This document shows positions 1,614 through 30,112 of a DNA stretch of 64,000 nt, piece after piece; positions within the stretch are counted from its first letter, which is position 1, and every line of letters starts with the position of its first letter. Where the stretch lies: IMG/VR virus record IMGVR_UViG_3300042691_055965, positions 62,001-126,000 of that record; one strand, 5' to 3'. A model generated the notes under the pieces. The model had not been told where the DNA came from and ran no database searches. It saw nothing but the letters and a program-made list of their open reading frames with translations. The position numbers and the translations under genes are program-made.

Positions 1614-3425
1614 ATGGGAGCATTATTAGAATCAGGTCTTGTTGGTAACATCGGTCTTAAGCACCTTAAAGTTATCAAAGAAGATACAATTAACAAATGG
1701 GATAAATTAGGATTCCTAGACGGTCTTAAAGGACACATCAAAGAGAACATGGCACAATTATATGAAAACCAAGCGTCTCACCTAATTAACGAAGCCGCGT
1801 CAACTGATAGTTCAGGTTCTTTCGAAACTGTAGTTTTCCCTATCGTTCGTCGTGTATTCTCTAAATTGTTGGCTAACGACATCGTTTCTGTACAAGCAAT
1901 GAACTTACCTATTGGTAAATTGTTCTACTTCGTACCTAAAATCCAAGGTTACACAACTGCAAATCCTACCACAAGTGCAATTCACAACCAACCAATTGGT
2001 GCACCAGGTTCAAACGCAACTACTAACACTGGATATAATGACGGTACACAGTACGCTAAAAATCTTTATGATTTATTTTACGAAGGGGCTGAAGCTGGAT
2101 TAGATCCTCCAGGACTTTTCGATTATTCTAAAGGAAGATGGACTGCTGTGACTTCTCCTACTACTACAGTTTCTTGGAGTAATGGTAATTTAGTACCTAA
2201 CGAAACTGATTATGAAACAACAGGAGTAAGAAAAGTAATTATCAAAATGTGTGGTTTCTATGACGCTGGTGTTGGTAAACTTATGGGTCCTGATGGTTCT
2301 GAAATCGATACTGAAGCATTCCTTTCTGATTTAACAATCACTAAAGGTGCTGGTTTAGGTGTAAGTGCTGACTCACCTTGTACAGTAGGAACAGGTTCTT
2401 TATTATTTAGAGTTGTTACTCAACAATATGGTAAAGGTATTGTTAGTCCTACTTATTCACAAGTATCTACTACATTCCCTAACGGAAATGGTGGTTCTTA
2501 CGATAACATTTGTGATCAAGATGGTTGTATTTTCCTTGAAGTGGATCTTTCTTGTCCTGTATGTGCTGACTGTAACGCTACTTCACTTGATGGTTACACA
2601 GGAGCAACCCTTTCTGCTGTGACTTCAGGAACTGCATTTTCTGCAACTTATAGAAGATATGCGGAACTTGAATTTGAAGATGCTATCGGTGAAGTTTCTT
2701 TCGACCTTGAGTCAGTTACTGTATCTGTAACAGAAAGAAAATTAAGAGCACAATGGTCTCCTGAATTGGCACAAGACGTTTCTGCATTCCACAACATTGA
2801 TGCTGAAGCTGAATTGACAGCTTTATTGTCTGAACAAGTTGCTGCAGAAATCGATCGTGAAATTTTACGTGACTTACGTAAAGGAGCGGCATGGAACCTT
2901 CGTTGGGATTACAACGGATGGAGAAGAATTGCTAACCAAACTTCTTACACTCAAAAAGACTGGAACCAAACTTTGATTACAGCAATCAACCAATTGTCAG
3001 CACAAATCCACAAATCTACTTTAAGAGGTGGTGCTAACTGGATCGTTGTATCTTCTGAAGTTTCAGCAATCTTTGATGATTTAGAATACTTCCACGTATC
3101 TAATGCATCTCCTGAGCAAGATCAGTATAACATGGGTATTGAAAGAGTTGGTACTCTTGCAGGACGTTATCAAGTATACCGTGATCCTTACTTCCCACCA
3201 AACCAAGTTTTGATTGGACACAAAGGAACATCGTTACTTGACACAGGTTATGTTTACGCACCGTATGTACCTCTACAATTAACACCTACAATGTACAATC
3301 CATTCAACTTCACACCTATCAAAGGTATTATGACAAGATACGCTAAGAAAATGGTTAATAACCGTTTCTACGGACGTATCACAGTTGATGGTGTACGTAC
3401 ATTCGATTTAAGAGAATTGAGATAA
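1614..3425 (+). CDS. Major capsid protein (T4 gp23 family) with a large Cys-containing insertion
   Basis: gp23 motifs: VRRVF..L.ANDIVSVQAM, RKLRAQWSPELAQD, H.IDAEAEL..LLSEQ...EIDREI, GYVYAPYVPL, F.P.KGIMTRYA. Confidence 0.95.
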   Translation: MGALLESGLVGNIGLKHLKVIKEDTINKWDKLGFLDGLKGHIKENMAQLYENQASHLINEAASTDSSGSFETVVFPIVRRVFSKLLANDIVSVQAMNLPIGKLFYFVPKIQGYTTANPTTSAIHNQPIGAPGSNATTNTGYNDGTQYAKNLYDLFYEGAEAGLDPPGLFDYSKGRWTAVTSPTTTVSWSNGNLVPNETDYETTGVRKVIIKMCGFYDAGVGKLMGPDGSEIDTEAFLSDLTITKGAGLGVSADSPCTVGTGSLLFRVVTQQYGKGIVSPTYSQVSTTFPNGNGGSYDNICDQDGCIFLEVDLSCPVCADCNATSLDGYTGATLSAVTSGTAFSATYRRYAELEFEDAIGEVSFDLESVTVSVTERKLRAQWSPELAQDVSAFHNIDAEAELTALLSEQVAAEIDREILRDLRKGAAWNLRWDYNGWRRIANQTSYTQKDWNQTLITAINQLSAQIHKSTLRGGANWIVVSSEVSAIFDDLEYFHVSNASPEQDQYNMGIERVGTLAGRYQVYRDPYFPPNQVLIGHKGTSLLDTGYVYAPYVPLQLTPTMYNPFNFTPIKGIMTRYAKKMVNNRFYGRITVDGVRTFDLRELR

Positions 3426-3451
3426 TCAAATCTAAAAATAGAATAAGAAAC

Positions 3452-3478
3452 AAGGGGAATGTAAATTCCCCTTTTTTT
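3452..3478 (+). terminator. Rho-independent terminator after MCP
   Basis: AAGGGGAAT-GTAA-ATTCCCCTT stem-loop followed by a T run. Confidence 0.9.
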
Positions 3479-3482
3479 GTTT

Positions 3483-3618
3483 GTATACGTATACTTTTCC
3501 TACTAACTACGTAGTTTTACTATATCGTTCTAAGTCCTATTTCTGAAATCAAAAATACCCATCCTTCAAAAAGGGGATTCTACTATAATATACTCCTATC
3601 TATTGTTAGAACCAAAAA
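3483..3618 (+). promoter_or_regulatory. Regulatory region of the secreted-protein cassette
   Basis: Perfect palindromes GTATACGTATAC (3483-3494) and AACTACGTAGTT (3505-3516), then a 76-nt element (3543-3618) repeated at 5708-5783. Confidence 0.6.
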
Positions 3619-3627
3619 TTTAACAAT

Positions 3628-5679
3628 ATGAAAAGAGTATTTTTAACAATCGCAACAACTTTAACAATGTTAACCACATTCGCTCAAAATAGAGTATGGG
3701 TTACAATTCCAAACATTGAGTCAGTAAGAACTGAACTACAAACACTAAACATTACTTCTGTTGAAAAGGCGTTTCCATCATCAAAAAGTCAAACACTTCA
3801 AAACGTATATGAATTACAATCAAATGTAAGTTCTACAGTTATTGTTGAATCACTTAAAAAAAGAAACGATTTGTTTGTGAACCCTGAAGTGGGTCCTGAC
3901 TATCAAACACTAGAAACTCCAAACGATTATAACACTGTCGTTCCAAATCAGTGGGCACTTGATATGATTGGTTCAAAAGAGGCATGGGATTACACAAAAG
4001 GTTCAACTGTGACTATTGCTATTACTGACGCTAACTTTTACGTTAATCACGAAGATTTAACAGGAAAATATGATTACATTACATTAAACAATACAAACAC
4101 GAACTACGGACATGGAACTGCAGTTGCTGTAATTGCAGGTGGAAATACTAATAACACTGTTGGAACTTCATCTATTGGTTATAATTCAAGATTACAACTA
4201 AGAACAATGTCTTATAATGAAATGCTTGATGCCACATATTCAGGAGCTAAAGTTATAAACGCAAGTTGGGCATCTTCTTGTTCTTTCAATTCATATGCTC
4301 AGATGGTAATTGATGAGGTTTATTCTAACGGAACTGTAATTGTTGCTTCAGCAGGAAATGGTTCTACTTGTGGTGGTTCTTTTAATCTTGTTTATCCTGC
4401 TTCATACAACCACGTAATATCTGTTTCATCTGTGGGGTTTGCAAATAACCACGAAAGATTCATGGGAGACCCAAACACAACTCACCAACACAATTCAATG
4501 GTTGATATTTGTGCACCAGGATATGACGTTCCATTAACTACTTCACCTGGGGTATACGTCACAGGAAATGGAACTTCATTTGCATCTCCTTTTGTTTCAG
4601 GAACTGTCGCTCTTATGTTATCTGTTAATCCTTGTTTAACTGTTGATAATATTGAGTATATCTTAAAAGAAACCGCAAACTCTGATATGTATTTAATTAA
4701 CCCAAATTATCAGGGATTACTTGGAGCAGGAACATTGAATTCTCATTTGGCTGTGAAAATGGCAAAAGAATTCAACACAATCAGTGGAACATTCAAAACT
4801 AATGTTGATTGTGTGTCAGGAGATAAGATTGTATCTGTATTGAACCTTGACGGAACAACACCTTATAACTATGAATGGATGAATGGTGATATTAACGAAA
4901 CAATTTCAGTATCAAACGACGGGTTTGTTTTAGTTCAAATTGTTGATTCGAATGGTTGTAGATTTACTGATTCAGTTTATGTTGAAAAATACGAAAAAAT
5001 TACAAGTGAATCTTTGGTTTCTGACGTAAAATGTTTTGGGATGTCAAATGGTGAAATTTCTGTAAACATTTCAGGTGGTGAATTTGTATCTGATGCTGTA
5101 TGGAATAACGGTGTTGTTGGTAACACTTTAACAAATTTAACTTCAGGTAATTATATTTTTACAGTTGTTGATGGATTTGATTGTGTTCACTCTGACACTT
5201 TAAGTGTAAGACAACCTGAACTACTTGTATCAAACATAACTTCTGTGAACCCTACAATCACTTCTGATGGTTCAATTAACATTACAGTTAATGGTGGAAC
5301 ATTACCATACACTTACGAATGGAACAATGGTGACACAACACAAAACTTAAATAATCTTTCTGAAGGATTCTATGAACTTCTTGTAACAGACGCAAATGGT
5401 TGTATGACTTCTGAGAATACAATGTTAAACACCCAAAATACCTCATCTGTGAGTGAATTAACTTCAAATGAACTACTTGTATACCCTAACCCTTCAAATG
5501 GTTCTGTAACGATTAAAACAGGTAAGGATGATGATTGTAACTTAACAATCACAAACATCAACGGACAAATTGTTGTAACTCAATCTACCTTTATCGGTGA
5601 GGTGTCTGTAAGTGATTTATGTGAAGGTGTTTACCTTGTGACAGTAAATAATGTAACTCAAAAGTTAGTTGTTAAGTAA
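3628..5679 (+). CDS. Secreted S8 (subtilisin-like) peptidase with SprB-like repeats and T9SS type A C-terminal domain
   Basis: Signal peptide; catalytic motifs AITD, GHGTAVA, GTSFASP; GGTxPYTYEWNNG repeats; C-terminal VYPNPSNG...GVYLV...KLVVK. Confidence 0.9.
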   Translation: MKRVFLTIATTLTMLTTFAQNRVWVTIPNIESVRTELQTLNITSVEKAFPSSKSQTLQNVYELQSNVSSTVIVESLKKRNDLFVNPEVGPDYQTLETPNDYNTVVPNQWALDMIGSKEAWDYTKGSTVTIAITDANFYVNHEDLTGKYDYITLNNTNTNYGHGTAVAVIAGGNTNNTVGTSSIGYNSRLQLRTMSYNEMLDATYSGAKVINASWASSCSFNSYAQMVIDEVYSNGTVIVASAGNGSTCGGSFNLVYPASYNHVISVSSVGFANNHERFMGDPNTTHQHNSMVDICAPGYDVPLTTSPGVYVTGNGTSFASPFVSGTVALMLSVNPCLTVDNIEYILKETANSDMYLINPNYQGLLGAGTLNSHLAVKMAKEFNTISGTFKTNVDCVSGDKIVSVLNLDGTTPYNYEWMNGDINETISVSNDGFVLVQIVDSNGCRFTDSVYVEKYEKITSESLVSDVKCFGMSNGEISVNISGGEFVSDAVWNNGVVGNTLTNLTSGNYIFTVVDGFDCVHSDTLSVRQPELLVSNITSVNPTITSDGSINITVNGGTLPYTYEWNNGDTTQNLNNLSEGFYELLVTDANGCMTSENTMLNTQNTSSVSELTSNELLVYPNPSNGSVTIKTGKDDDCNLTITNINGQIVVTQSTFIGEVSVSDLCEGVYLVTVNNVTQKLVVK

Positions 5680-5707
5680 TAACACTTAATCATTTTAATA
5701 ACAACTA

Positions 5708-5783
5708 CTGAACTTCAAAATACCTACCCTCCGAAAACAGGATTTAACAACATACATCACCTATATATTTGTAGAAACAAAAA
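5708..5783 (+). promoter_or_regulatory. Second copy of the 76-nt upstream element, including a Bacteroidota -7 box TATATTTG (5764-5771)
   Basis: Ungapped alignment to 3543-3618, about 53/76 identical by manual count. Confidence 0.65.
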
Positions 5784-5810
5784 ATAACTAACAATTAAAA
5801 AATAAAAAAA

Positions 5811-6638
5811 ATGAAAACAAAAATTTTAAACACAATTCTTTTTACACTTCTAACAGTTGTAACATTCGCACAAACTAAAGTACCTTTCAATCTTGGGGTT
5901 TCTCAAACTAACCCAACTTGTGTTAACTTTTCTGATGGTGAAATTACCGCACTTCCTTCAGGTGGTTTTCCTCCTTATACTTACCAATGGAGTAATGGTG
6001 ATACCACTCAAACGATATCAAATCTTTCGGCAGGAAATTATTCAGTAACTGTAACAGATTCTTACAACAGTACAATCGCAGCATTTCTTACAGTTGACAA
6101 TCCACTTCCTATCACAATTTCAGGAACACAATCAAATGTAACTTCTTTTGGTTTGTCTAACGGACAAATAGATATTGTAGATATTTCAAATACAACAGGT
6201 TCATTTACTTACCAATGGTTTACTGCGGGTGGTAGTTTTCAAAACCAAGGTAATTTAGACCAACAAGGATTAACTTCAGGTTATTATAAAATAATGGTTA
6301 CAGATTCTATTGGTTGTGTAGGAATCGGTTATTTTACAATTTCACAACCAAACCCATCATTACCAACTCTTAACAATCCTAACTTGATTAGTCCAAGTAT
6401 TTCTAACAACACATCAGCCATTTCAACTTATCCAAACCCATCAAATGGTAATTTCACAATAGAGACTAAAGAAAATGTAAGTGAAATTAGAATTGTGAAT
6501 ACAATCAATGGTGAAGAAGTTTATAACGACAAATCATCTTTATCAAAATTATATGTTGATAATCTTAAAACAGGTATCTATATGATTTATGTAACAACAG
6601 AAAAAGGAACAGAAACAAAAAGAATAACTATACTTTAA
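5811..6638 (+). CDS. Secreted SprB-repeat protein with T9SS type A CTD
   Basis: Signal peptide; GGFPPYTYQWSNG..TQTISNLSAGNYSVTVTD; TYPNPSNGNF...GIYMI...KRITIL. Confidence 0.88.
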   Translation: MKTKILNTILFTLLTVVTFAQTKVPFNLGVSQTNPTCVNFSDGEITALPSGGFPPYTYQWSNGDTTQTISNLSAGNYSVTVTDSYNSTIAAFLTVDNPLPITISGTQSNVTSFGLSNGQIDIVDISNTTGSFTYQWFTAGGSFQNQGNLDQQGLTSGYYKIMVTDSIGCVGIGYFTISQPNPSLPTLNNPNLISPSISNNTSAISTYPNPSNGNFTIETKENVSEIRIVNTINGEEVYNDKSSLSKLYVDNLKTGIYMIYVTTEKGTETKRITIL

Positions 6639-6660
6639 TAATTAAAATAAAAAAAAGAAC

Positions 6661-7257
6661 ATGAAAAATTTAATCATCACATTAGCATCATTATTTTTAA
6701 CGGTATCTGTATCATTTTCACAACAGATGTCATTACAAACAACCAAAATAGACCCATCATGTAACGGGTACAATAACGGAGAAATTATTATTGATATAAC
6801 AGGAGGTGTTGAACCTTACACAATAAATGGTTTACAGATAAATGGAACTCAGTTTATTGCAACTAATTTATCTGGTGGACAATATGTTTTTGATGTAACC
6901 GACTCTAATTTGAGTTCTTCAGTTGCTACTTTAACATTGACAGATCCACAACCGTTGGTAATACAAATATTAAAAACTGACGTTACGACATTTGGTGGAA
7001 ATAATGGTTCTGCGGATGTCACAATATTAAACGGTACTGCTACATATAATTGGACTGGCAATGGCTCAGGTATTATCCCAAATCAAGAAGATCAATTTTT
7101 GTTAACGGCAGGAATATACAATATTGAAATAACGGCGATTGATGGTTGTGTGTATAATAAGAGAATTATAATCGATCAACCATCCGCAAGTGGTTTTCCG
7201 TCTTCATATAACCCTAATACACAAGGTTTTCAACAAAATACAATTTCAAACAATTAA
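6661..7257 (+). CDS. Secreted SprB-repeat protein lacking a CTD (paralogue of 5811-6638)
   Basis: Signal peptide; two SprB-like repeats colinear with the upstream gene; ends at ISNN. Confidence 0.8.
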   Translation: MKNLIITLASLFLTVSVSFSQQMSLQTTKIDPSCNGYNNGEIIIDITGGVEPYTINGLQINGTQFIATNLSGGQYVFDVTDSNLSSSVATLTLTDPQPLVIQILKTDVTTFGGNNGSADVTILNGTATYNWTGNGSGIIPNQEDQFLLTAGIYNIEITAIDGCVYNKRIIIDQPSASGFPSSYNPNTQGFQQNTISNN

Positions 7258-7321
7258 AAATAACAAAGTCGAAAAAAGAATAATAATTCTTTGATTATTG
7301 TTGGTTCCACAAAAAAGAAAT

Positions 7322-7345
7322 CCCCCAAGAATTTGGGGGTTTTTT
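7322..7345 (+). terminator. Rho-independent terminator
   Basis: CCCCCAA-GAAT-TTGGGGG followed by a T run. Confidence 0.88.
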
Positions 7346-7404
7346 AATTTAAAATTAACATTGTTTTCTTATATTTTTGATACTTATAATTAAAAGGTCA
7401 TATA

Positions 7405-8361
7405 ATGAAAAATTTATTGTTAATGTTTGCGTTAATGGTTTCGCAAATTCTATCTTCCCAAACAACCATCTATTCTGAAAATTTTGGTACAGTAACTTCT
7501 AACACTTCTGTCAGTTCATTTAATGGTTGGCAAAATTCAAGCCCAATTACATACACAGGAAATGTAGATGTAAGGAGGACACAACCATCTTCACCAACAC
7601 CAAATGATGACAATGCTAATGTTTTTTTTACAAATTCCACACCAAGAAGTTTTACAATTTCAGGAATCAACACATCAACGTATTCTGAAGTATTTTTAAC
7701 ATTAAATCATTTCAAAAGTACAATAGCTGGTAATAATGAATTATTAATACAAGTTAGTTCGGATGGTATTAATTATACAACTTTATCTTATAGTCGTCCA
7801 ACTGGAGGTGGAACGGCAATATGGAGATTAATAAGTCCATCAGGAACAATTCCAATTACTAATAACTTAAGAATTAGATTTACTCAAACATCAACATCAA
7901 CTCAATTCAGAATTGATGATATAACATTAACAAGTCCTGTATCTTTGCCTGTTGAACTCACATATTTTGATGGTGTAAAACAAGATGGTTTTAACTTATT
8001 GAAGTGGCAAACGGCATCAGAATTTAATTCAAGTCACTTTATAATCGAAAAAACAACCACAGGTGATTTTAAAAATTCAACAATTGTTGGAAATATTTTG
8101 GGTTCAGGATATTCACAAAACATTATAGATTATGATTTACTTGACATGAAAGTAGAAAATGTAATTAATTACTATAGACTTATTCAATACGATTTTGACG
8201 GTAAAACAAAAGTATATCCAATAATAGCAATTGATAACAGACATCAAAAAGAAGTCGAAAAAATTGTTGATTTGTCAGGTAAAGAAGTTAACGAATATTA
8301 TAAAGGGATAGTTATCATTTATTATAAAAATGGTGAATTTGTTAAAACTTATCAATATTAA
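7405..8361 (+). CDS. Secreted beta-rich protein with an LPVEL Ig-like domain and short T9SS-like CTD
   Basis: Signal peptide; LPVELTYFDG...W.TASE.N...YYRL.Q.D.DG domain typical of Bacteroidota T9SS cargo; C-terminal KIVDLSGKEV...IIYY..G. Confidence 0.75.
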   Translation: MKNLLLMFALMVSQILSSQTTIYSENFGTVTSNTSVSSFNGWQNSSPITYTGNVDVRRTQPSSPTPNDDNANVFFTNSTPRSFTISGINTSTYSEVFLTLNHFKSTIAGNNELLIQVSSDGINYTTLSYSRPTGGGTAIWRLISPSGTIPITNNLRIRFTQTSTSTQFRIDDITLTSPVSLPVELTYFDGVKQDGFNLLKWQTASEFNSSHFIIEKTTTGDFKNSTIVGNILGSGYSQNIIDYDLLDMKVENVINYYRLIQYDFDGKTKVYPIIAIDNRHQKEVEKIVDLSGKEVNEYYKGIVIIYYKNGEFVKTYQY

Positions 8362-8387
8362 TTATTAACTGTTAAATATTAAACAAG

Positions 8388-8417
8388 AAGGGGTGTATGA
8401 TAATTCACCCCTTTTTT
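8388..8417 (+). terminator. Rho-independent terminator
   Basis: AAGGGGTG/CACCCCTT stem followed by a T run. Confidence 0.85.
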
Positions 8418-8461
8418 GGTATTTTCACTACGTATTTTTACGTATATCTTTCTATTTATAG

Positions 8462-8525
8462 TAAAGACACGACCGGCCCATGGTAGATGGGGGTTCCACC
8501 ACAAGGTTCTTCAAGTGTGACTTTA
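8462..8525 (+). ncRNA. Candidate structured 5' leader RNA
   Basis: GC-rich island right after TATTTATA (8453-8460); nested stems TAAAG-ACAC/GTGT-GA-CTTTA, GACC/GGTT, CCCAT/ATGGG. Confidence 0.35.
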
Positions 8526-8553
8526 GTTTTAAACCCACAAAATTAAAGGTCAT

Positions 8554-10545
8554 ATGAAAAAACTTGCATTACTCCTATTTACGTTATTAGTAAATTTTAA
8601 TCTACTTTCACAATTTTGTTCAACAACAGGTCTTGTGAATATGGGTGTTATTACACCAACAGGGACATTCCAAAATGTGTCAAACGCATCATCAGCAAAA
8701 AGGTATTGGAGATTCACGGCAACAGCTGGATGTACTTACGATTTTTCTACTTGTAATAGTGCGTTTACAAATGATACATATTTAAGACTATACTCAACCG
8801 CTACAGGTGGAACTGTATTGGCTCAGAATGACGACAACGGTCCGTTTTGTGGTGGAACAAAGGCATCACTTACTTGGGTTTGTCCTGCAAATGGAACGTA
8901 TTCAATACTTGTTACAAATTATAGTTGTGCAAATCTAAGTGCAACAACAATATTAAGTTACAGAGTCACTTGTGCTCCTGTATATAATCCTTGTTCTTCG
9001 ATTACAACAATTGCAAGTTGTGGAACTAATGTTTCTACAACAATGTCAGGTGGAGGGGCAGGGTGGAATGTCAGTACCTGTGGATTTTCAACACCAGGAC
9101 AAGAAAGAATATTCCAATTCACACCTACTCAGACAGGAACATATACTCTTAATGTGACATCAATCACAGGAGGATACGTTGATTTCTTTTGGAAACCTGC
9201 GTCAGGTGGGTGTGGTAGTACAGGGTGGAACTGTATTGATGACATTAGCTTTACAGGAAGTTTTAATGGAGTAACCCCAATGACATTTACTGCTGGTGTT
9301 ACATATTATATTCTTTTAGACCCTGAAACAACAGGTACATATAATGTAACATTTAATTTGGGTTGTCCAATTGTTGCACCTGCTAATGATTTAATATGTA
9401 ATGCGACTACAATTACTTGTGGTTCATTAGTCGGGGGAACTACTGTGGGTTCAACCCTAACAGGTGCAGGTGAAGGAGGTTCTTGTGGGACCACACAAAC
9501 GACGGGAGGTGTGTGGTATAAAGTTGTTGGCACCGGAGATGTAATGACCGCATCTCTGTGTGTCACAGCTTGGGACAGTAAGATGTCAGTGTTTCAAGGT
9601 TCTTGTACAACACCTGTTTGTGTAGGTGGTATAGATGATAACGGACCGTCGTGTACGGGGACTGCAGCATCGTATTCTTGGACTTCAACACCAGGTGTAA
9701 CATATTTTATACTTGTACACGGATATAGTACAACATCAACTTTTAGTTTAGCATTTACGTGTTCACCTCCACCACCACCAGGTCCTTGTTTGAATACAAC
9801 AGCTTGGAGTGTAGAAAACCTACCAACAACCACAACACCTGACGTAACCACATTGTGTTCAGCGGGTAATGGACAATACACAGATGAATATAGCCAATGG
9901 AATAATGGTGTTGCTGGAGTAACTTATACTGTATTATCAAGTATACCTACTGATTGGGTTACAGTTACAGTTTCAACACCTAACGGAACAGTCGTTTCTT
10001 ATGGTTCATCTCCTTTAGATTTTACGGCATCAATAAATGCAACTTACTATGTTCACATAAATGCAAATGGGTATTGTTTAGATGATGCTAATTGTAGAAA
10101 CGTAACAGTATCAAGAATAAGTGCGTTACCAATAGAATTAATAAGTTTTGATGGTGTTAATAATGGTAGTAGTAACTTATTATATTGGTTAACTGCTTCT
10201 GAACACAACAATAACTATTTTACCTTGGAAAGGTCTAATGATGGTGAAAATTGGGAAGAAGTGACAAAAATAGTTGCCGCAGGGCAATCAACACAAGAAC
10301 TTTCTTATTCATATTCAGATGAAACATTTTCAAGAAATATGATTAATTATTATAGACTTTCACAAACTGACTATGATGGAACTACTGAATTTTTTAACAT
10401 AGTGTCTTTAGATAATACACTTTCAAATAAAAAAGTGGTAAAGTATATTAATATTACAGGACAAGAAATTGATGTTATGTCTGCAACAGGTGTTTATTTC
10501 AAAGTTTATGATGACGGTTCAATGAAAAGAGTTTATAAACAATAA
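8554..10545 (+). CDS. Secreted Cys-rich multidomain protein (PPC-like domains, LPIEL domain, short T9SS-like CTD)
   Basis: Signal peptide; DTYLRLY..NDDNG and PANDLICNA modules; ALPIELISFDG domain; C-terminus similar to 7405-8361. Confidence 0.78.
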   Translation: MKKLALLLFTLLVNFNLLSQFCSTTGLVNMGVITPTGTFQNVSNASSAKRYWRFTATAGCTYDFSTCNSAFTNDTYLRLYSTATGGTVLAQNDDNGPFCGGTKASLTWVCPANGTYSILVTNYSCANLSATTILSYRVTCAPVYNPCSSITTIASCGTNVSTTMSGGGAGWNVSTCGFSTPGQERIFQFTPTQTGTYTLNVTSITGGYVDFFWKPASGGCGSTGWNCIDDISFTGSFNGVTPMTFTAGVTYYILLDPETTGTYNVTFNLGCPIVAPANDLICNATTITCGSLVGGTTVGSTLTGAGEGGSCGTTQTTGGVWYKVVGTGDVMTASLCVTAWDSKMSVFQGSCTTPVCVGGIDDNGPSCTGTAASYSWTSTPGVTYFILVHGYSTTSTFSLAFTCSPPPPPGPCLNTTAWSVENLPTTTTPDVTTLCSAGNGQYTDEYSQWNNGVAGVTYTVLSSIPTDWVTVTVSTPNGTVVSYGSSPLDFTASINATYYVHINANGYCLDDANCRNVTVSRISALPIELISFDGVNNGSSNLLYWLTASEHNNNYFTLERSNDGENWEEVTKIVAAGQSTQELSYSYSDETFSRNMINYYRLSQTDYDGTTEFFNIVSLDNTLSNKKVVKYINITGQEIDVMSATGVYFKVYDDGSMKRVYKQ

Positions 10546-10587
10546 ATTTATAAACTTTCAGATATTTATTTATAAATCCACATTTTA

Positions 10588-11307
10588 ATGGACTTAAATA
10601 ATATAATAAAAAAAGTAGTTAAAGAAGCAAATTCCGATAGGTATGCCGGTTCATATAACGGACCTTTGTCTATGGGTGAAATCGATTGGGGTAAACAAGA
10701 ACTTGGACCTTTCGATACTAAAGTATCTAATTTCTTCAATGCCGAATTAGAATATGATAGTTATGACGGTTCATTAGATATGAGTAAAAAAAAGGCTAAA
10801 AGTCTTGAAACTAAAGCCAAAAAAATATCTTTATATAACAAAAAACACAAAACACCTAACGACGAAGATGGTGGAATAATAAATCAAACACCAGGTAAAA
10901 ACTTGAAGTTTGTTCCATTAAAAGAATGGGTTGATTTGGATTCAATTGTTTTAAATGAAGATTTGGCAGTATGGTTTGGAACAAAAAAGAAAGGTAAAGG
11001 TACTAAACAACCACAAGGTCCTTGGGTTAACATTTGTAGGAAAAAGAAAGGTGGAGGACATCCACCGTGTGGTAGACCTGAAGGTGAATCGAAGGGTTAT
11101 CCTAAATGTAGAGCCGTAGGTGTTGCAAGAAACATGACAGATGTACAAAAAAGAGCAGCATGTCAACAAAAAAGAAAAGCGGAAAAACAAGATACACAAA
11201 CAGGAAAAGGACAAAAACCTGTAATGACATCATATAAACCAAAAAAGAAAAGAACTCAAAAGGAATCTGTTGATTTTCTTGTAAAGAGTATTTTATCTAT
11301 TCTTTAA
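10588..11307 (+). CDS. Hypothetical protein, probable internal head protein with a basic Cys-containing domain
   Basis: Late motif upstream; N-terminal IIKKVVKE; EDLAVWFG...WVNIC...PCGR...YPKCR domain. Confidence 0.6.
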   Translation: MDLNNIIKKVVKEANSDRYAGSYNGPLSMGEIDWGKQELGPFDTKVSNFFNAELEYDSYDGSLDMSKKKAKSLETKAKKISLYNKKHKTPNDEDGGIINQTPGKNLKFVPLKEWVDLDSIVLNEDLAVWFGTKKKGKGTKQPQGPWVNICRKKKGGGHPPCGRPEGESKGYPKCRAVGVARNMTDVQKRAACQQKRKAEKQDTQTGKGQKPVMTSYKPKKKRTQKESVDFLVKSILSIL

Positions 11308-24690: not shown

Positions 24691-25509
24691 TTATTTATAC
24701 AACTTTTGTGAAAAATTTTTCATTTCTTCAATTTGTTGTTTTAGATTTGGTACGTCTACAAATTTATCATAAATAGACGTAATACTTCTGTCACAAAAAT
24801 TTGTAGCTTCCACAGGAACCACCTTTAAGTTTAATCCGTATATTTCACTGATTAATTCTACCAAATCTTTTTTATTAACTGTGTTAGAATGAATATGTTT
24901 AATCCCATTCCAAAAAAGATTTTCGTCAATAATTTTTTTACAAATTTTTGCAAATTGTAAACACGTCATACCGTTCCAAAAATGATTAGTAAATCCGTTT
25001 ACCGTGTTGTTTTTTTCGGATTTAATCCACTCGACTAAAGATCTACCTTGATTTATTTCTTCACCAATAATTGATGTTCTTATTACGGTGCAATTATCGG
25101 GCTCACCCAGTGCTTTTGACATACCATACACATCGCTAACATCGTATTTATCGTTTTCGTTATATTTTCCTTTATTACCCGTATAAACACAATCCGTAGT
25201 AGGATGAATCATTTTAACACCCAACAATTTACAAACATTGGACAACATTCTTGGGAAAACAGAATTGACTAAAATTGCATTCAAATCTCCTAATTCGTCT
25301 ACCCTTGGTTTGATAGTTCCTGCACAATTAATTAAAATGTCATTTTCTTTTATGTCAATATTAATTAATTGACTTTTTAATTTATTTTCGTCAATTTTTG
25401 ATGCGTCAATTTCTTTCCTTCCAACATTAACTATTTCATAAAATTCAGATAAATATGTTGATACATAGTTACCTAACATTCCTGTATTTCCTATAATGTA
25501 AACTTTCAT
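24691..25509 (-). CDS. rmlD: dTDP-4-dehydrorhamnose reductase-like SDR
   Basis: GNTGMLG, TDCVY.G..G.Y.E.D, YGMSK..GE, RTSIIG. Confidence 0.85.
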   Translation of the reverse strand: MKVYIIGNTGMLGNYVSTYLSEFYEIVNVGRKEIDASKIDENKLKSQLINIDIKENDILINCAGTIKPRVDELGDLNAILVNSVFPRMLSNVCKLLGVKMIHPTTDCVYTGNKGKYNENDKYDVSDVYGMSKALGEPDNCTVIRTSIIGEEINQGRSLVEWIKSEKNNTVNGFTNHFWNGMTCLQFAKICKKIIDENLFWNGIKHIHSNTVNKKDLVELISEIYGLNLKVVPVEATNFCDRSITSIYDKFVDVPNLKQQIEEMKNFSQKLYK

Positions 25510-25521
25510 AATTTTTATTTT

Positions 25522-25941
25522 TTATCTATAATTTTCTTCCCAGATATTCCATTTATTGTGTTCTTCTCTTATATCATCGTCTAAACTTTCAGACAATGTT
25601 GTCGTTGAAAAAAATAACAATTTAGTGTTTTCTTCTAATGATTTGAATCCGTTAAAATTACCTGGTGGGATAAAAAGTACTTTAGGTGATTTATCTGATA
25701 AAATGTATTTTGAAATTTCATTGGTTTCCATATTTACAACACCAATTAGTGCCGAACCCGATGCGACATAAACATATTTACCTTCTTTTTTATGTCCGTG
25801 CCAAGCCCTTATAAACCCTTTACTGTGGTTTTCTACGTGATAAAATCTTTTTACATTTTGGAAATTGAAGTCGTTAACAAAACGCACAGTACCTCTATCA
25901 TCAACAGAAATACCACCATTTATTAATTTTGTACCATTCAT
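25522..25941 (-). CDS. rmlC: NDP-4-keto-6-deoxyhexose 3,5-epimerase-like cupin
   Basis: DDRG, RAWHGH, LFIPPG..NGF. Confidence 0.75.
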   Translation of the reverse strand: MNGTKLINGGISVDDRGTVRFVNDFNFQNVKRFYHVENHSKGFIRAWHGHKKEGKYVYVASGSALIGVVNMETNEISKYILSDKSPKVLFIPPGNFNGFKSLEENTKLLFFSTTTLSESLDDDIREEHNKWNIWEENYR

Positions 25942-26897
25942 ACTAATTCATTTTTTTCTTTTTTATTTTTTAGATATGCCCCATTATGATATACTTTATC
26001 TTCTGGATTTGATACTCTATTTTCATTAAACATTTTTACCATTCTGATAACTTCGTCTTCTACGGTTACCTGTGGTTTATATTTAAAAACTTTTAATGAC
26101 TTTGAATTATCAACTTTATAATTTCTTGCATCTTGAAAACTAATTTCAGTGTAGTTTATTTTAGTTCCTGGAATCAATTTAGCTACCCTTTCACCTAGTT
26201 CTTTAATTATAACATTTTCTTTTGCTAAAACAAATATTCCTGAATATTTTTCTTTACAAGCTTCAGTAACATATTCGGCGATGTCTTTCACCGCTATTAT
26301 TGGTCTCCATTGTTCACCACCATTTATTGTTATTTCTTTTTCTTTAACTGCTTTCATTGTCAAAACATTTACAACTAAATCCATCCTTAAACGACTATAG
26401 GTGTCACCTAAACCAAATACGGTGCCCAATCTAAAAACAGTACCACCTTTTTGTAAAATGTATTTTTCTGCGGCTAATTTTGTCGAGGCATATGACGATA
26501 ATGGGTTTGTTTCACTTTCTTCATTTAACCATCCATTTTGTGCACCATAAACGGAACAAGTAGACATAAAAACTAAATGTTTGTTAGGTAAAACCACATC
26601 ACAAAAGTCTTTAATTGATTTGTAATTTATTTCTTCAGTAAGGTGTTGATCGACACTACATGCTGGATCACCAACAAGTGCAGACATTAAAACTATTATA
26701 TCAAAATTTTTGGATACGTTATATAGTTTTTCAGTATCCCTAATATCCCCATAAATAAAATTTATGTCTTTTAAGAACCTATTTTCGTACAATAAATTAT
26801 CAAAAACAGTTACTTCAAATCCGTCTCTAATTAGATAGTCACAAGTCAACCCACCAATATAACCTGCTCCTCCACATAACAATACTTTTTTTTTCAT
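25938..26897 (-). CDS. NAD-dependent epimerase/dehydratase
   Basis: GGAGYIG, STCSVYG, YASTK, RLGTVFG. Confidence 0.88.
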   Translation of the reverse strand: MKKKVLLCGGAGYIGGLTCDYLIRDGFEVTVFDNLLYENRFLKDINFIYGDIRDTEKLYNVSKNFDIIVLMSALVGDPACSVDQHLTEEINYKSIKDFCDVVLPNKHLVFMSTCSVYGAQNGWLNEESETNPLSSYASTKLAAEKYILQKGGTVFRLGTVFGLGDTYSRLRMDLVVNVLTMKAVKEKEITINGGEQWRPIIAVKDIAEYVTEACKEKYSGIFVLAKENVIIKELGERVAKLIPGTKINYTEISFQDARNYKVDNSKSLKVFKYKPQVTVEDEVIRMVKMFNENRVSNPEDKVYHNGAYLKNKKEKNELV

Positions 26898-26909
26898 TTT
26901 TTTAAAATT

Positions 26910-27491
26910 TTATTCTATTATTTTACTATCTAAAGTTAAAACATATAGATAGTTAATGTTATTATTAACCTGCCGGAATTCATGGGTTTCCTGATGAACT
27001 ACATAAAAATATTTACTAATGATAGGTTCCCAATAATTCATATCTTCTATAATTGTATGTAATTCAACACCATTCTGTATATCATGATGATTTGCTATTG
27101 TTAAAATAACATTTTTAGATATTTGTGCAAAATTGTTTAAAACATTTTCAATAAATGACTTATCTAAGTGCTCTAAAACATCTAAACAAGTTAATAGTTC
27201 GTAACTATTCTTTTTAATTTTTTCAAAGTCTTTATCATTTGATAAATCCAAACTTATAAATTCGTAATCCAAATTATTAAATTTATTCAAATCTGTACAA
27301 GTTATTTGTATATCCGAAACTTCACTTGAAAGTAATTTTAAAAAAGTTCCAGTACCCGTGCTTATATCAATTATGGATTTTATGTTGTTTTTTTTAATAA
27401 AGTCAATCGAATATTTACCACTCACAGGGCTTCCCCCATACTCGTTATATTTTTGACTAAAAAGTTTACTATAGGTTTCTAAATAATCCAT
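26910..27491 (-). CDS. Class I SAM-dependent methyltransferase
   Basis: IIDISTGTG, CLDVLEHL. Confidence 0.8.
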   Translation of the reverse strand: MDYLETYSKLFSQKYNEYGGSPVSGKYSIDFIKKNNIKSIIDISTGTGTFLKLLSSEVSDIQITCTDLNKFNNLDYEFISLDLSNDKDFEKIKKNSYELLTCLDVLEHLDKSFIENVLNNFAQISKNVILTIANHHDIQNGVELHTIIEDMNYWEPIISKYFYVVHQETHEFRQVNNNINYLYVLTLDSKIIE

Positions 27492-27531
27492 GTTGTAAAC
27501 ATGATTGTTTTTAATTTTTTGTAAACATTAT

Positions 27532-28449
27532 TTATAATGAATTTATTAAATTCAACCATGTTTCCTTACAAAAATCGGTAGTTAATCCCATTTCAATAAA
27601 GTCTTTTCTAGGGTCGAATTCAGTTTTATTATTTATAACGTAATTAATTTCACGTATAAAATCTTTGTAATCAAATGATTTTGTGTTTCTACCCCATTTC
27701 CCATTTGGTTTATTATAATATATACCTACATTTGACGTGACTAATGGTAAACCGCATGCGGCAGCTTCTACTCCCGCTAAATGTAAAGTTTCTACTCTTG
27801 AAGTACAAACCAAAAGTTGACAAGAATTCATGATTTTTACCAGCAAATCATGATCGATGCGGTTAAAAACTTTGACTCTTTCATTTTTAATCGAAAAATC
27901 ATCTTTCATTACTAAACAAAAATTATAATTAGTATTTTCAATGATATTAATCATAATGTCAAAACCTTTTGGTGTAATATTGTCCGCCCCAATAAAAAGG
28001 ATTGAATTTGGTAATAATCCTAAATTATCAGTGAAATTATAATTCAAAGGTTTAAATTTGTTGAAATCGACACCTAGAGGTATCATGACAGTTTTACTTG
28101 TTATTAAATTTTCATAATGTGATTGAGTATATGGTGAATTAAAAACTACAATATCGGAATTATTACAAACTTTAATTTGTTCATAATTATTAGGTGTCAA
28201 ATCTTGTAACAAACTAATAGTTTTAGTCGGTATATTCATTTGTCTGAAATATGTTGCATTCCTTATTATATAGTCAGGTACACCATTATTTAAGGCATCA
28301 AATTCAATATTATTAGGTAAGACATGAAAAGGTGTGTAACCGTTACATTTGTCTTCTAAATTAGGTATCCATTCTAACAAATCATGCCAGAATGTTTTTG
28401 TATTTGGTATACAAGTTAATGTGTCGTTAACTAACCATCCTTTTTTCAT
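27532..28449 (-). CDS. Glycosyltransferase family 4-like
   Basis: IPLGVD...F, KGFD, ETLHLAGVEAAACGLP.V.S.VG. Confidence 0.85.
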   Translation of the reverse strand: MKKGWLVNDTLTCIPNTKTFWHDLLEWIPNLEDKCNGYTPFHVLPNNIEFDALNNGVPDYIIRNATYFRQMNIPTKTISLLQDLTPNNYEQIKVCNNSDIVVFNSPYTQSHYENLITSKTVMIPLGVDFNKFKPLNYNFTDNLGLLPNSILFIGADNITPKGFDIMINIIENTNYNFCLVMKDDFSIKNERVKVFNRIDHDLLVKIMNSCQLLVCTSRVETLHLAGVEAAACGLPLVTSNVGIYYNKPNGKWGRNTKSFDYKDFIREINYVINNKTEFDPRKDFIEMGLTTDFCKETWLNLINSL

Positions 28450-29075
28450 AAAAAATTATTATTTATCCAAACAGAATCATGTTGTTGTTGTCCGTTTATA
28501 GTGACACTTGTCATATCAACCATACTAAATCCTTTTTTTGTCAAAAAATTCACAACATCTTTGTGTAATTTTTGGTTTTCAAAAAAAGGGTATGATTCAG
28601 TTTCAATATGCATTATTTTAATATTATTAATTATGTCTGACATACTAAATAATATTTCATAAGTTGCCCCTTCAACATCTATCTTTACCAAGTCTATATT
28701 AGGAATATTATAATCGTCACATATTGTTTTTATTGTTTTACATTTCAATAATAATATTTCACTACCATATTCATTACCTCGATTACGTATACCATGTAAA
28801 CCATTTATGTTTTTTTTATAATATTCAATTTTACCATCATAATCAGCAACGACAATATTTATAGGTATTATTTCTGATAAGTTTTTCAAATATTTTTCAT
28901 AATTATCAGGTAACCCTTCAATACAATAAACGTTCGAGTTTGGAAAACAAGTTTTGAAAAATAAAGAATCTTTGCCATGTAATGAACCAATTTCCATTAT
29001 GTTTTTTATTTCATCATCTTTGAAATATTTTTTTGTAATATCTACAAATTGTTGCATATTAATTTCTAATCTCAT
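28446..29075 (-). CDS. FkbM-family methyltransferase
   Basis: EIGS..G.DS, IDLVKIDVEGA.YEIL. Confidence 0.85.
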   Translation of the reverse strand: MRLEINMQQFVDITKKYFKDDEIKNIMEIGSLHGKDSLFFKTCFPNSNVYCIEGLPDNYEKYLKNLSEIIPINIVVADYDGKIEYYKKNINGLHGIRNRGNEYGSEILLLKCKTIKTICDDYNIPNIDLVKIDVEGATYEILFSMSDIINNIKIMHIETESYPFFENQKLHKDVVNFLTKKGFSMVDMTSVTINGQQQHDSVWINNNFL

Positions 29076-30112
29076 AATAAATTTTTATATAGTTTAAGAT
29101 ACTTTTTTGATACATTAATGTAATCGTAAAGATCATCAGATCTAGTTTTCAAATAATCCGATACCATTTTATAGTAACTGGAATCATTTTTCAATTTTAA
29201 CATTAAATTTGAATAGTTTTCAACTATATTATCCGACACAAACAACTCCGTGAAATCACCCACCAACTCTCTATGTGCTTGTGGCCAAGATTCCATACCG
29301 ACATGGGTTATTACGGGTTTTTTATTAATCATTGCTTCTGCGATAGTATTCCCAAAAGTTTCACCTAAAGAATTACTATGACATAAAACATCAATGGTAT
29401 TGTAAAATTTAGAAACATCCAATTCGTTTGATGAAGGTTTTAAAAAAATAATATTATTTATTTCTAATTTTTTGGCATCCTCAATCGCTTTCTGATTTGG
29501 TGCCATATAAAGAAAACACGTATCGTTAGACTCAATTTTTTTATATGCTCTTAAATTTATATCACTATATATATTACTGTCAGGTCTACCAATTCTTCCG
29601 TAAATAAATTTATGTTTTAAATTTAATTCATCACGTAAATTTTGATTTGTTATGGTTGTATTAATTGGGTTAGGGATTACAACATACGGTATATTTGTTT
29701 TTTGCAGATGATTTGTTAATGTTATTGAAGGATAAATTCTAAAATCTGATTTAGTTTGATTATAACCATGAAAGTTTGTCTCAACAACTTTAAATTTAAA
29801 TTCTGTTGTTTCGAAATCAGGTAAAAACCAAGTATCATTCCCTGATCTATGTGTTTGTAAAATATCTATGTCGTAATTATTTAATTCTGATACATGATTA
29901 AACTCTATCATTTTTATTGGTAAGGTTTTGTATTCATCGAAACGACTAGGGTTGGTTTCAGACTCATCAATTCTTGGGTGTGAATACTTATTGTAAAATA
30001 CTGTTATATCAGTTTCTAAATTTAATAATCCTTTTATCAAGTTTAAGGCACATTTGTCAGCCCCACCAACACCAAAAGAAACAATTTGCCCAATTTTCAA
30101 TTTATTCCCCAT
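29072..30112 (-). CDS. Glycosyltransferase family 4-like
   Basis: GGADK, GRIGR, GETFGNTIAEAM...KPVI. Confidence 0.85.
   Translation of the reverse strand: MGNKLKIGQIVSFGVGGADKCALNLIKGLLNLETDITVFYNKYSHPRIDESETNPSRFDEYKTLPIKMIEFNHVSELNNYDIDILQTHRSGNDTWFLPDFETTEFKFKVVETNFHGYNQTKSDFRIYPSITLTNHLQKTNIPYVVIPNPINTTITNQNLRDELNLKHKFIYGRIGRPDSNIYSDINLRAYKKIESNDTCFLYMAPNQKAIEDAKKLEINNIIFLKPSSNELDVSKFYNTIDVLCHSNSLGETFGNTIAEAMINKKPVITHVGMESWPQAHRELVGDFTELFVSDNIVENYSNLMLKLKNDSSYYKMVSDYLKTRSDDLYDYINVSKKYLKLYKNLL

What the first reader, a model, noticed from the sequence alone, without database searches (positions are those of the whole stretch)
3628..10545. Phage-encoded type IX secretion (T9SS) cargo cassette directly after the capsid gene
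Five consecutive genes have Sec signal peptides and Bacteroidota surface-protein architecture: a subtilisin with SprB repeats, two SprB-repeat proteins, and two LPVEL-domain proteins. Two end in a canonical type A CTD (YPNP...G.Y...K) and two in a short CTD-like tail. No T9SS machinery is present in the window, so the phage would load its cargo onto the host T9SS to remodel the infected cell surface. Possible roles are cleaving or masking receptors (superinfection exclusion), competing with SprB gliding adhesins, proteolytic nutrient capture, or grazer defence. Host-type O-glycosylation sequons D(S/T)(V/L/T/I) are also present (TDSV, SDTL, GDTT, TDSI).
Basis: partly seen in the sequence, partly recalled or inferred. 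Interest (0 to 1): 0.85.

Follow-up and report, generated by a model that had tools for sequence, protein, structure and literature searches.

The report
Phage island of host-type secreted proteins
A giant freshwater phage of Bacteroidota carries, right after its capsid gene, a swappable island of five exported proteins (a protease, adhesin-like and sugar-binding-like proteins), two of which bear the host's type IX secretion tag, so the phage probably uses its host's own secretion machine; the idea was published in 2020 for another phage but has never been tested.

Summary
Five consecutive + strand genes (3628-10545) follow a Gp23-type capsid gene. They are the only 5 of 59 window genes with signal-peptide-like N-termini, and all five expose Gln after the predicted cleavage site (the Bacteroidetes Q-rule). 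A is an S8 subtilase with an intact triad, SprB repeats and a type A T9SS CTD. B has SprB repeats and a type A CTD. C is a B paralog without a CTD. D and E share an Fn3-like "LPVEL" domain plus a ~40-residue tail that does not match CTD models.

The interval between the capsid gene and a conserved downstream gene is a hypervariable hotspot. In 47 related phage loci it spans 0.2-8.1 kb and holds homing endonucleases and other exported hydrolases or binding proteins. The A-B pair recurs in independent phage assemblies under purifying selection, so this is not an assembly chimera.

The modules are host-derived: bacterial homologs are T9SS cargo. The O-glycosylation sequons are not enriched.

Phage-encoded T9SS cargo in flexible islands was already described for "Cryophage" (Bellas 2020). 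This is therefore a new member of a known kind, in a different and large phage lineage. The short-tail C-terminal module is uncharacterised, and secretion and biological role are untested.

The parts
1614..3425 (+). Major capsid protein (Gp23 type), the conserved left flank of the island
   Evidence: Pfam Gp23 4.2e-74 and phrog_138. It is 75-88% identical in at least 597 IMG/VR loci.
3452..3473 (+). Intrinsic-terminator-like hairpin plus T run, separating the capsid gene from the island
   Evidence: 9-bp stem, T run.
3553..3572 (+). Upstream motif shared by genes A and B (second copy at 5718-5737); a possible common regulatory element
   Evidence: Two exact matches to the degenerate 20-mer in 64 kb, 0.16 expected; alignment.
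3628..5679 (+). Gene A, an exported subtilase. Layout: signal peptide (residues 1-19), ~100-aa pro-region-like segment, S8 catalytic domain (about nt 4000-4686; D134, H162, N244, S317), three SprB-type repeats (about nt 4816-5427), type A T9SS CTD (nt 5473-5676)
   Evidence: The same architecture occurs in more than 1300 homologs.
5811..6638 (+). Gene B: signal peptide, two SprB-type repeats, type A T9SS CTD (nt 6423-6635)
   Evidence: It is paired with A in L086 and L087.
6661..7257 (+). Gene C: a paralog of B (signal peptide plus SprB repeats) that ends where the CTD would begin. It has no CTD.
   Evidence: The 148-nt gap downstream holds a terminator and no CTD remnant.
7322..7339 (+). Terminator-like hairpin after gene C
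7405..8361 (+). Gene D: signal peptide, jelly-roll (CBM/galactose-binding-like) domain, Fn3-like 'LPVEL' domain plus ~40-aa three-strand tail (nt 7945-8358)
8388..8413 (+). Hairpin plus T run after gene D (seen by eye; the scanner did not list it)
8554..10545 (+). Gene E: signal peptide, Cys-rich N-terminal modules homologous to bacterial T9SS cargo (some of those homologs carry PPC or GBD_T9SS_assoc domains), then LPVEL domain plus short tail (nt 10126-10542)
10588..11307 (+). Conserved basic protein F, the right flank of the hypervariable interval
   Evidence: Homologs follow the island in 47 related loci.

Best explanation
The interval between the capsid gene and conserved gene F is an exchangeable accessory-gene hotspot in a large family of freshwater jumbo T4-like phages of Bacteroidota. 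In this phage it holds five genes assembled from host surface-protein modules.

All five products carry Bacteroidota-style Sec/SPI signal peptides with Gln at +1, so they should be exported to the periplasm of the infected cell.

A (a catalytically intact subtilase with SprB-type repeats) and B (a SprB-repeat protein) also end in canonical type A CTDs. The host T9SS should therefore recognise them, move them across the outer membrane, remove the CTD, and either anchor them on the cell surface or release them.

C (no CTD) and D/E (Fn3-like LPVEL domain plus a short tail) reach at least the periplasm. Whether the short tail is a sorting or anchoring signal is open.

The most likely purpose is to alter the infected cell's surface or immediate surroundings by proteolysis and binding. 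In relatives this also includes secreted nucleases and metalloproteases. Possible effects are destroying or masking receptors or loosening matrix, so that progeny are not lost and rival phages are excluded.

What is shown: the domains, the context, the conservation and the host origin. What is inferred: secretion and purpose.
For: - HMM hits above curated cutoffs for S8, SprB and the type A CTD. My own CTD HMM hits only A and B in the 64 kb window.
- The catalytic residues D134, H162, N244 and S317 align to Ak.1 protease.
- Signal-peptide-like N-termini occur only in these 5 of 59 genes, all following the Q-rule. The Q-rule is specific to Bacteroidetes (PMC5837995).
- Hotspot: 47 loci with conserved flanks have gaps of 200-8097 bp. 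Ten are empty and 19 hold signal-peptide ORFs (24 signal-peptide ORFs, 21 with Q). Homing endonucleases sit at the same site (phrog_3339 2e-82, phrog_1035 5e-15).
- Exported cargo in relatives includes S8, Endonuclease_NS, GEVED, CUB, fn3, GBD_T9SS_assoc and M54/M10.
- The A-B pair follows Gp23 in a 283 kb contig from another sample, and lies elsewhere in a 128 kb phage contig.
- dN/dS is 0.10-0.21 for A and 0.29-0.34 for B, against 0.22-0.23 for the capsid gene.
- Bacterial homologs of A and E are T9SS cargo in chromosomal contexts.
- Precedent: Cryophage (PMC7468147).
Against: - There is no experimental evidence of expression, secretion or CTD cleavage.
- The host is unknown, and CTDs can be species-specific (PMC11285876), so compatibility is assumed.
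- Only 2 of the 5 proteins have a demonstrable CTD.
- Signal peptides were called by a heuristic, not a trained predictor.
- SprB-type repeats also occur in virion proteins: phrog_2973 Hoc-like and Wac whiskers of RB43/RB16-like phages.
- The biological role is not constrained by the data.
Confidence: 0.65

Rival explanations
1. D, E and C are not T9SS substrates. They are Sec-exported periplasmic or outer-membrane-associated proteins, for example binding envelope glycans or a membrane partner. Only A and B use the T9SS.
For: - No CTD hit in Pfam, NCBIfam or my own HMM, even at Z=1.
- The canonical CTD is a seven-strand sandwich whose integrity is needed for export (PMC11285876), whereas the D/E tail has only three strands.
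- In 8 of 14 relatives the D/E-type gene is translationally coupled to a ~155-aa multi-pass membrane ORF.
Against: - Bacterial proteins with the same LPVEL domain carry a type A CTD right after it: 19 of 20 in GTDB loci.
- The tail aligns weakly to the beta3-loop-beta4 and beta6-beta7 parts of the CTD. The hhalign score is 19.8, against at most 14.2 in 40 column shuffles. Those regions hold the two motifs reported as functionally relevant.
- The short-tail module also ends a 1595-aa GEVED protein in a bacterial chromosome, so it is a native C-terminal module.
Confidence: 0.4
2. B and C (and perhaps A) are capsid or neck decoration proteins of the Hoc/Wac kind, encoded next to the capsid gene.
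For: B and C hit phrog_2973 'Hoc-like head decoration' weakly (1e-6 and 3e-3). B's repeats are ~33% identical to Wac whisker proteins of RB43/RB16-like phages. The genes sit directly after the capsid gene.
Against: - All carry cleavable-looking signal peptides, and B a T9SS CTD, which would take them out of the cytoplasm where heads assemble.
- The genes are absent from most relatives, and 10 of 47 loci have an empty site.
- Terminators separate them from the capsid gene.
- The A-B pair also sits far from head genes in L087.
- The similarity is confined to the Ig-like repeat.
Confidence: 0.06
3. The region is host DNA joined to phage DNA by misassembly, or freshly captured host DNA with no function for the phage.
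For: All modules have close bacterial counterparts: 42-44% identity for A and up to 56-61% for E. GC of the island is 0.333 against 0.297 for the window downstream of the island (10588-64000).
Against: - Both flanks are phage genes on one 229 kb contig.
- Identical D and E proteins occur on 6 and 4 contigs, the longest 265,855 bp.
- Syntenic islands exist in independent samples (L086, L171, L004, L034).
- A is 89% identical to the L069 copy while the capsid proteins are only 79% identical, and dN/dS is 0.10-0.21.
- None of 80 bacterial loci with E-like genes carries phage core genes.
- The capsid gene itself has a higher GC, 0.384.
Confidence: 0.04

Closest known systems
T9SS type A cargo genes of 'Cryophage' (76 kb Bacteroidetes phage from cryoconite; Bellas et al. 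2020, PMC7468147)
   Same: Phage-encoded proteins with type A sorting domains, located in variable metagenomic islands, with cargo that differs between phage variants. The authors proposed hijacking of the host T9SS and roles in competition or superinfection exclusion.
   Different: - It is a different phage: 76 kb circular, against a Gp23-type jumbo phage of at least 229 kb.
- Its cargo differs: an endoglucanase, a GH39 and a PA14 protein, against a subtilase, SprB-repeat proteins and LPVEL-tail proteins.
- Here the island is a single hotspot next to the capsid gene, shared by a large family and co-occupied by homing endonucleases.
- The Cryophage record was not in the searchable collection, so no sequence comparison was made.
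T9SS sorting-domain proteins near head genes of crAss-like 'cluster 2' phages (de Jonge et al. 2019, PMC6949934)
   Same: Bacteroidota phages with T9SS sorting-domain ORFs adjacent to the head module.
   Different: They are gut crAss-like podophages, and the proteins carry BACON repeats. The function was left open and no hotspot analysis was done.
Bacterial S8-SprB-CTD peptidases and other T9SS type A cargo of Flavobacteriales, Crocinitomicaceae and Saprospiraceae
   Same: Homologs of A have an identical domain order (signal peptide, S8, SprB repeats, CTD) in chromosomal contexts. E's N-terminal modules occur in proteins named 'T9SS type A sorting domain-containing'.
   Different: The window copies lie in a phage genome, at 42-61% identity to the bacterial ones. 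In E and D the canonical CTD is replaced by the LPVEL domain plus short tail.
Q-rule secreted proteins of Porphyromonas gingivalis phages (Matrishin et al. 2023, PMC10367356)
   Same: Phage genes of unknown function whose signal peptides expose N-terminal Gln, read as adaptation to host secretion and a potential to modify the outer membrane.
   Different: They are prophages of an oral anaerobe, and that text does not mention the T9SS at all (0 occurrences of 'T9SS' or 'type IX').
Hoc (T4 head decoration) and Wac whisker proteins with Ig-like repeats
   Same: Ig-like or SprB-like repeats, and a gene position near structural genes.
   Different: Hoc and Wac are cytoplasmic virion proteins without signal peptides or CTDs (established knowledge). 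Here every protein has a signal peptide.

Membership tests
T9SS type A cargo | C-terminal type A sorting domain (TIGR04183 / PF18962) above the curated cutoff | tested here: met
   Met for A (40.6 bits against cutoff 23; 43.9 against 27) and B (37.7 and 51.4 bits). Not met for C, D or E.
T9SS type A cargo | N-terminal Sec signal peptide | tested here: met
   The heuristic flags A-E and no other of the 59 genes, and all five have Q at +1. No trained predictor was available, so this is provisional.
T9SS type A cargo | Secretion depends on the T9SS, and the CTD is removed by a PorU-type sortase in a host that has a T9SS | not testable with these tools
   The host is unknown. It is inferred to be a Bacteroidota member from the Q-rule, the CTDs and the nearest bacterial homologs.
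T9SS type B cargo (TIGR04131 / CHU_C) | Type B C-terminal domain | tested here: not met
   No NCBIfam hit at E<=0.1 and no Pfam hit at E<=0.01 to a type B domain in A-E.
Canonical CTD fold, for the D/E tail | Seven-strand 3+4 Ig-like sandwich of about 67-108 residues (PMC11285876) | tested here: not met
   The tail is ~40 residues and forms three strands after an Fn3-like domain in AF2 models (pLDDT 88.5 and 78.2). Foldseek finds Fn3 domains and no CTD. Similarity to part of the CTD is weak.
Subtilase (peptidase S8) | Asp-His-Ser triad and oxyanion Asn in S8 order | tested here: met
   D134, H162, N244 and S317 align with the catalytic motifs of Ak.1 protease 1dbi. Pfam S8 1.7e-27.
SprB-repeat proteins | PF13573 repeat above the gathering score | tested here: met
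   A 47.1, B 62.7 and C 33.5 bits, against a cutoff of 28.
Hoc-like head decoration protein | Cytoplasmic protein (no signal peptide) that binds assembled capsids | tested here: not met
   Signal peptides are present and B has a CTD. The PHROG hits are weak and confined to the repeats. Capsid binding is not testable here.
Bacteroidota general O-glycosylation targets | Enrichment of D(S/T)(A/I/L/V/M/T) sequons in exported proteins | tested here: not met
   Five sequons in 2137 aa, all in A and B. That is 2.3 per 1000, against 2.2 in the other window proteins and 4.25 expected.

The most novel reading that the evidence does not exclude
The Fn3-like LPVEL domain plus ~40-residue tail that ends D and E may be an undescribed C-terminal sorting or anchoring signal of Bacteroidota. 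It would be a 'half-CTD' that keeps only the sheet carrying the beta3-beta4 loop and the C-terminal motif.

The profile finds 719 clusters (at 50% identity) at E<=1e-30. Most of the best 150 match end-to-end at the protein C-terminus, on N-terminal parts of very different kinds and lengths. The contexts read here were mostly phage islands, plus one bacterial chromosome. Phages would use this module preferentially to route swappable cargo, or alternatively to engage and block the host translocon.
Probability: 0.2. Interest if true: 0.7.

Novelty: new member of a known kind. Interest (0 to 1): 0.5.

Why it matters
If A and B are really secreted through the host T9SS, a lytic-type jumbo phage family that is abundant in lakes reprograms its host's surface and exoproteome with proteases, nucleases and binding proteins. 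These are traded at a single recombination hotspot.

That would extend 'auxiliary genes' from metabolism to the secretome. It would offer natural, compact CTD-tagged cargo for studying T9SS recognition, and it bears on receptor dynamics and superinfection exclusion in Bacteroidota.

The short-tail LPVEL module is a concrete and testable candidate for an additional sorting signal. The main limit is that the concept was already proposed in 2020 and nothing here is experimental.

Tried and rejected
- DNA-level search of 3400-10600 against isolated phages: no match.
- PDB sequence searches with the LPVEL-tail profile and with E: nothing useful.
- Foldseek of the D C-terminus and of full-length D: only generic Fn3 and jelly-roll accessory domains at low TM-scores, and no T9SS CTD. 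The matches of full-length D to large multi-domain proteins are generic beta-sandwich similarity and were not interpreted.
- T4 late promoter TATAAATA: absent from the first 12 kb. The Bacteroidota -7 motif TAnnTTTG occurs 4 times there, roughly what base composition predicts, so no promoter claim is made. The sigma-70 scan was at background.
- I first thought the short-tail module was phage-specific: all 14 island copies and two further contexts were phage, and none of 20 bacterial LPVEL proteins had it. I rejected this when P0436 was found in a clear bacterial chromosomal context.
- Cryophage accession MT820023 was not in the collection.
- MAFFT and hhalign disagree on which half of the CTD the tail resembles. 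I treat the correspondence as unresolved.


Full report
**1. Observation**

The window has five consecutive + strand ORFs at the stated coordinates:

| Gene | Coordinates | Length |
|---|---|---|
| A | 3628-5679 | 683 aa |
| B | 5811-6638 | 275 aa |
| C | 6661-7257 | 198 aa |
| D | 7405-8361 | 318 aa |
| E | 8554-10545 | 663 aa |

They start 203 nt after a Gp23-type major capsid gene at 1614-3425 (Pfam 4.2e-74, phrog_138).

Domain content:
- A matches Peptidase_S8 (1.7e-27), SprB (47 bits, cutoff 28), Por_Secre_tail (43.9 bits, cutoff 27) and TIGR04183 (40.6 bits, cutoff 23).
- B matches SprB (62.7 bits), Por_Secre_tail (51.4 bits) and TIGR04183 (37.7 bits).
- C matches SprB only (33.5 bits).
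- D and E match nothing.
- The catalytic residues of A (D134, H162, N244, S317) align with those of Ak.1 protease.

Relationships among the five:
- B and C are paralogs (36% identity over 193 aa, including the signal peptide).
- C stops where B's CTD begins. The 148-nt gap after it holds a terminator hairpin and no CTD remnant.
- D and E share their last ~140 residues (BLASTP 1e-24).

Signal peptides: a simple hydrophobicity/charge rule marks exactly these five of the 59 genes of the window. All five have Gln after an AxA-like site at residues 18-20. This is the Bacteroidetes 'Q-rule' (PMC5837995).

That compares with 2.2 in the other window proteins and 4.25 expected from composition, so they carry no information.

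**2. It is a phage, and the island is phage-resident**

- The window is part of IMG/VR contig 3300042691_055965 (229 kb).
- It also encodes PhoH, a family B DNA polymerase, a helicase and large virion proteins.
- The nearest isolated relatives of the capsid protein are Flavobacterium phage immuto, Microcystis phage Mel-JY01 and Rhodothermus phage RM378, at 37-43% identity.
- At least 597 IMG/VR stretches encode a capsid protein related to this one (tblastn E<=1e-3); the 80 best loci kept are 74-88% identical.

In 47 related loci that contain both the capsid gene and a homolog of gene F (10588-11307), the flanks are collinear and the interval between them ranges from 200 to 8097 bp:
- Ten are empty.
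- Nineteen hold signal-peptide ORFs. Of 88 island ORFs, 24 are signal-peptide ORFs, and 21 of those follow the Q-rule.
- Fourteen hold D/E-type proteins.

The same site in relatives holds homing endonucleases (phrog_3339 2e-82; phrog_1035 5e-15) and families of unknown function.

Exported proteins in relatives include further S8 proteases, Endonuclease_NS nucleases, GEVED, CUB, fn3, GBD_T9SS_assoc and Laminin_G_3 modules, and metallopeptidases.

The A-B pair recurs elsewhere:
- It directly follows Gp23 in a 283 kb contig from another sample, followed there by a third CTD protein.
- It lies at a different position in a 128 kb phage contig.
- A 301 kb contig from a third source has a GEVED/LPVEL-tail gene at the same site.

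Further evidence against a chimera or dead cargo:
- Identical D and E proteins are on record on several contigs, up to 265,855 bp.
- dN/dS is 0.10-0.21 for A and 0.29-0.34 for B, against 0.22-0.23 for the capsid gene.
- A is 89% identical to the L069 copy while the capsid proteins are 79% identical. This suggests exchange of the cassette between phages.

Assembly chimerism and dead cargo are therefore very unlikely.

**3. Origin of the modules**

- More than 1300 proteins share A's full architecture. Those at 42-44% identity lie in bacterial chromosomal neighbourhoods with an H+-PPase and two-component systems.
- E's Cys-rich N-terminal part is up to 56-61% identical to proteins named 'T9SS type A sorting domain-containing' from Flavobacteriales, Crocinitomicaceae and Saprospiraceae MAGs, several from a lake time series.
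- None of the 80 bacterial loci fetched carries phage core genes.
- The T9SS and the Q-rule both point to a Bacteroidota host. The host species is not known.

**4. The D/E C-terminus**

Structure:
- AlphaFold models are confident: pLDDT 88.5 for the C-terminal 146 residues and 78.2 for full-length D.
- They show a jelly-roll domain, then an Fn3-like sandwich that starts at LPVEL, then three short strands.
- Foldseek finds only generic Fn3 or CBM-type domains.

Comparison with bacterial proteins:
- In bacterial proteins the same LPVEL domain is followed by a full type A CTD. The distance from LPVEL to the end is 170-195 residues, and 19 of 20 GTDB copies follow this pattern.
- In the D/E family that distance is 134-142 residues, and no CTD model matches, even with Z=1.
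- Profile-profile alignment gives a weak match of the tail to the beta3-loop-beta4 region, and with a 16-residue deletion to beta6-beta7. The score is 19.8, against at most 14.2 in 40 column shuffles.
- Those regions contain the two motifs reported as relevant for T9SS function, but the same paper shows that the integrity of the seven-strand fold matters (PMC11285876).

Distribution:
- A profile of the module finds 107,296 clusters at E<=1e-3 and 719 at E<=1e-30.
- Most of the best 150 match end-to-end at the protein C-terminus, on N-terminal parts of 0 to about 1450 residues.
- Contexts read were mostly phage (14 islands).
- One is a clear bacterial chromosome: P0436, a 1595-aa GEVED protein. 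The module is therefore native to the hosts as well.

In 8 of 14 relatives the D/E-type gene overlaps the start of a ~155-aa multi-pass membrane ORF. The window has no such ORF.

Whether the tail is a sorting signal, an anchor or neither is unresolved.

**5. Mechanism**

Shown: the domain content, the catalytic residues, the signal-peptide-like N-termini, the type A CTDs of A and B, the hotspot, purifying selection and host-type ancestry.

Inferred, in order:
1. All five proteins are exported by Sec.
2. A and B are then taken by the host T9SS, lose the CTD, and are displayed or released.
3. The protease and the binding proteins alter the cell surface or the surrounding matrix.

Transcription looks modular. 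Terminator hairpins follow the capsid gene, C and D, and A and B share an upstream motif. Timing cannot be read from sequence.

The co-occurrence of secreted proteases and nucleases in relatives fits receptor or matrix destruction at least as well as adhesin competition.

**6. Comparison with what is known**

- Bellas et al. 2020 described three variable genes with type A sorting domains in the 76 kb 'Cryophage'. They called it a unique case of phage-encoded T9SS cargo and suggested hijacking of the host system and superinfection exclusion.
- De Jonge et al. 2019 noted T9SS sorting-domain ORFs beside head genes of some crAss-like phages.
- Matrishin et al. 2023 noted Q-rule signal peptides in P. 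gingivalis phages.
- Further text searches found nothing more.
- No isolated phage in the collection has a full-length relative of A (S8 domain only). D-type proteins were found only in three uncultured huge phages.

The present case is therefore a new member of a known kind:
- another lineage, the Gp23-type jumbo phages;
- other cargo;
- a defined hotspot shared by a large family;
- an uncharacterised C-terminal module.

**7. Verdict**

The feature is real, well supported as phage-encoded host-type exported proteins, and moderately interesting. Nothing about function has been tested.

Noticed in passing
window 24691-36720 (- strand): A ~12 kb glycan-biosynthesis cluster in the phage. It holds an RmlD-like reductase, an NAD epimerase/dehydratase, two methyltransferases (one FkbM type), at least seven glycosyltransferases (GT1/GT2/GT4/DXD) and a UDP-GlcNAc 2-epimerase (E 1e-62). 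Together with the exported-protein island, this could mean a broader programme of envelope modification.
   Followed up: partly
L035:11964-12644, L037:2957-4666, L020:4875-6449 and similar ORFs in many related loci: Homing endonucleases (phrog_3339, phrog_559, phrog_1035) occupy the same capsid-to-F interval in relatives, which probably explains why this site is a recombination hotspot.
   Followed up: partly
L036:13950-14408, L037:7189-7668, L004:15674-16135 and five more: A ~155-aa multi-pass membrane ORF overlaps the stop of D/E-type genes in 8 of 14 relatives. It has no family hit and is absent from the window. It may be a partner or immunity-like protein.
   Followed up: partly
L045:9367-9960, L060:7875-8450, L063:12453-13028, L078:13467-14051, L021:13279-13866: Relatives carry a small signal-peptide-bearing DNA/RNA non-specific endonuclease (Pfam 1.7e-24) next to a 774-aa S8 protease in the same island.
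   Followed up: partly
L007, L009, L013, L032, L039, L047, L055 islands: A family of island proteins without signal peptides, with an N-terminal '...E.E..RIL.LHE...' motif. It is often present in several paralogs per island and has no hit in Pfam or PHROGs.
   Followed up: no
window 5960-6311 (B residues 50-167): B's SprB-type repeats are ~33% identical to the Wac whisker/fibritin proteins of RB43/RB16-like T-even phages. The same repeat is therefore used in virion-surface proteins of unrelated phages.
   Followed up: no
window 3628-5679 versus L069:4051-4525: Gene A is more similar between two phages (89% aa) than their capsid proteins are (79%). This suggests recent lateral exchange of the cassette among phages.
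   Followed up: partly
window 1932-2681 (capsid residues ~107-356): The capsid protein has a long, poorly conserved, Cys-containing central segment between conserved N- and C-terminal parts. It is ~250 aa here and ~170 aa in phage immuto, and probably corresponds to a variable insertion domain.
   Followed up: no
window 43850-48220 (+): A 1456-aa protein made of 11-15 repeated units, matching PHROGs for virion structural and tail-spike proteins. It has no Pfam hit.
   Followed up: no
P0332-P0338: Some very long proteins (1200-3600 aa) carry 6-12 tandem copies of the LPVEL Fn3-like domain, so the domain is also a repeat unit of giant proteins. The domain family has more than 100,000 clusters and no Pfam model hit in my scans.
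   Followed up: no
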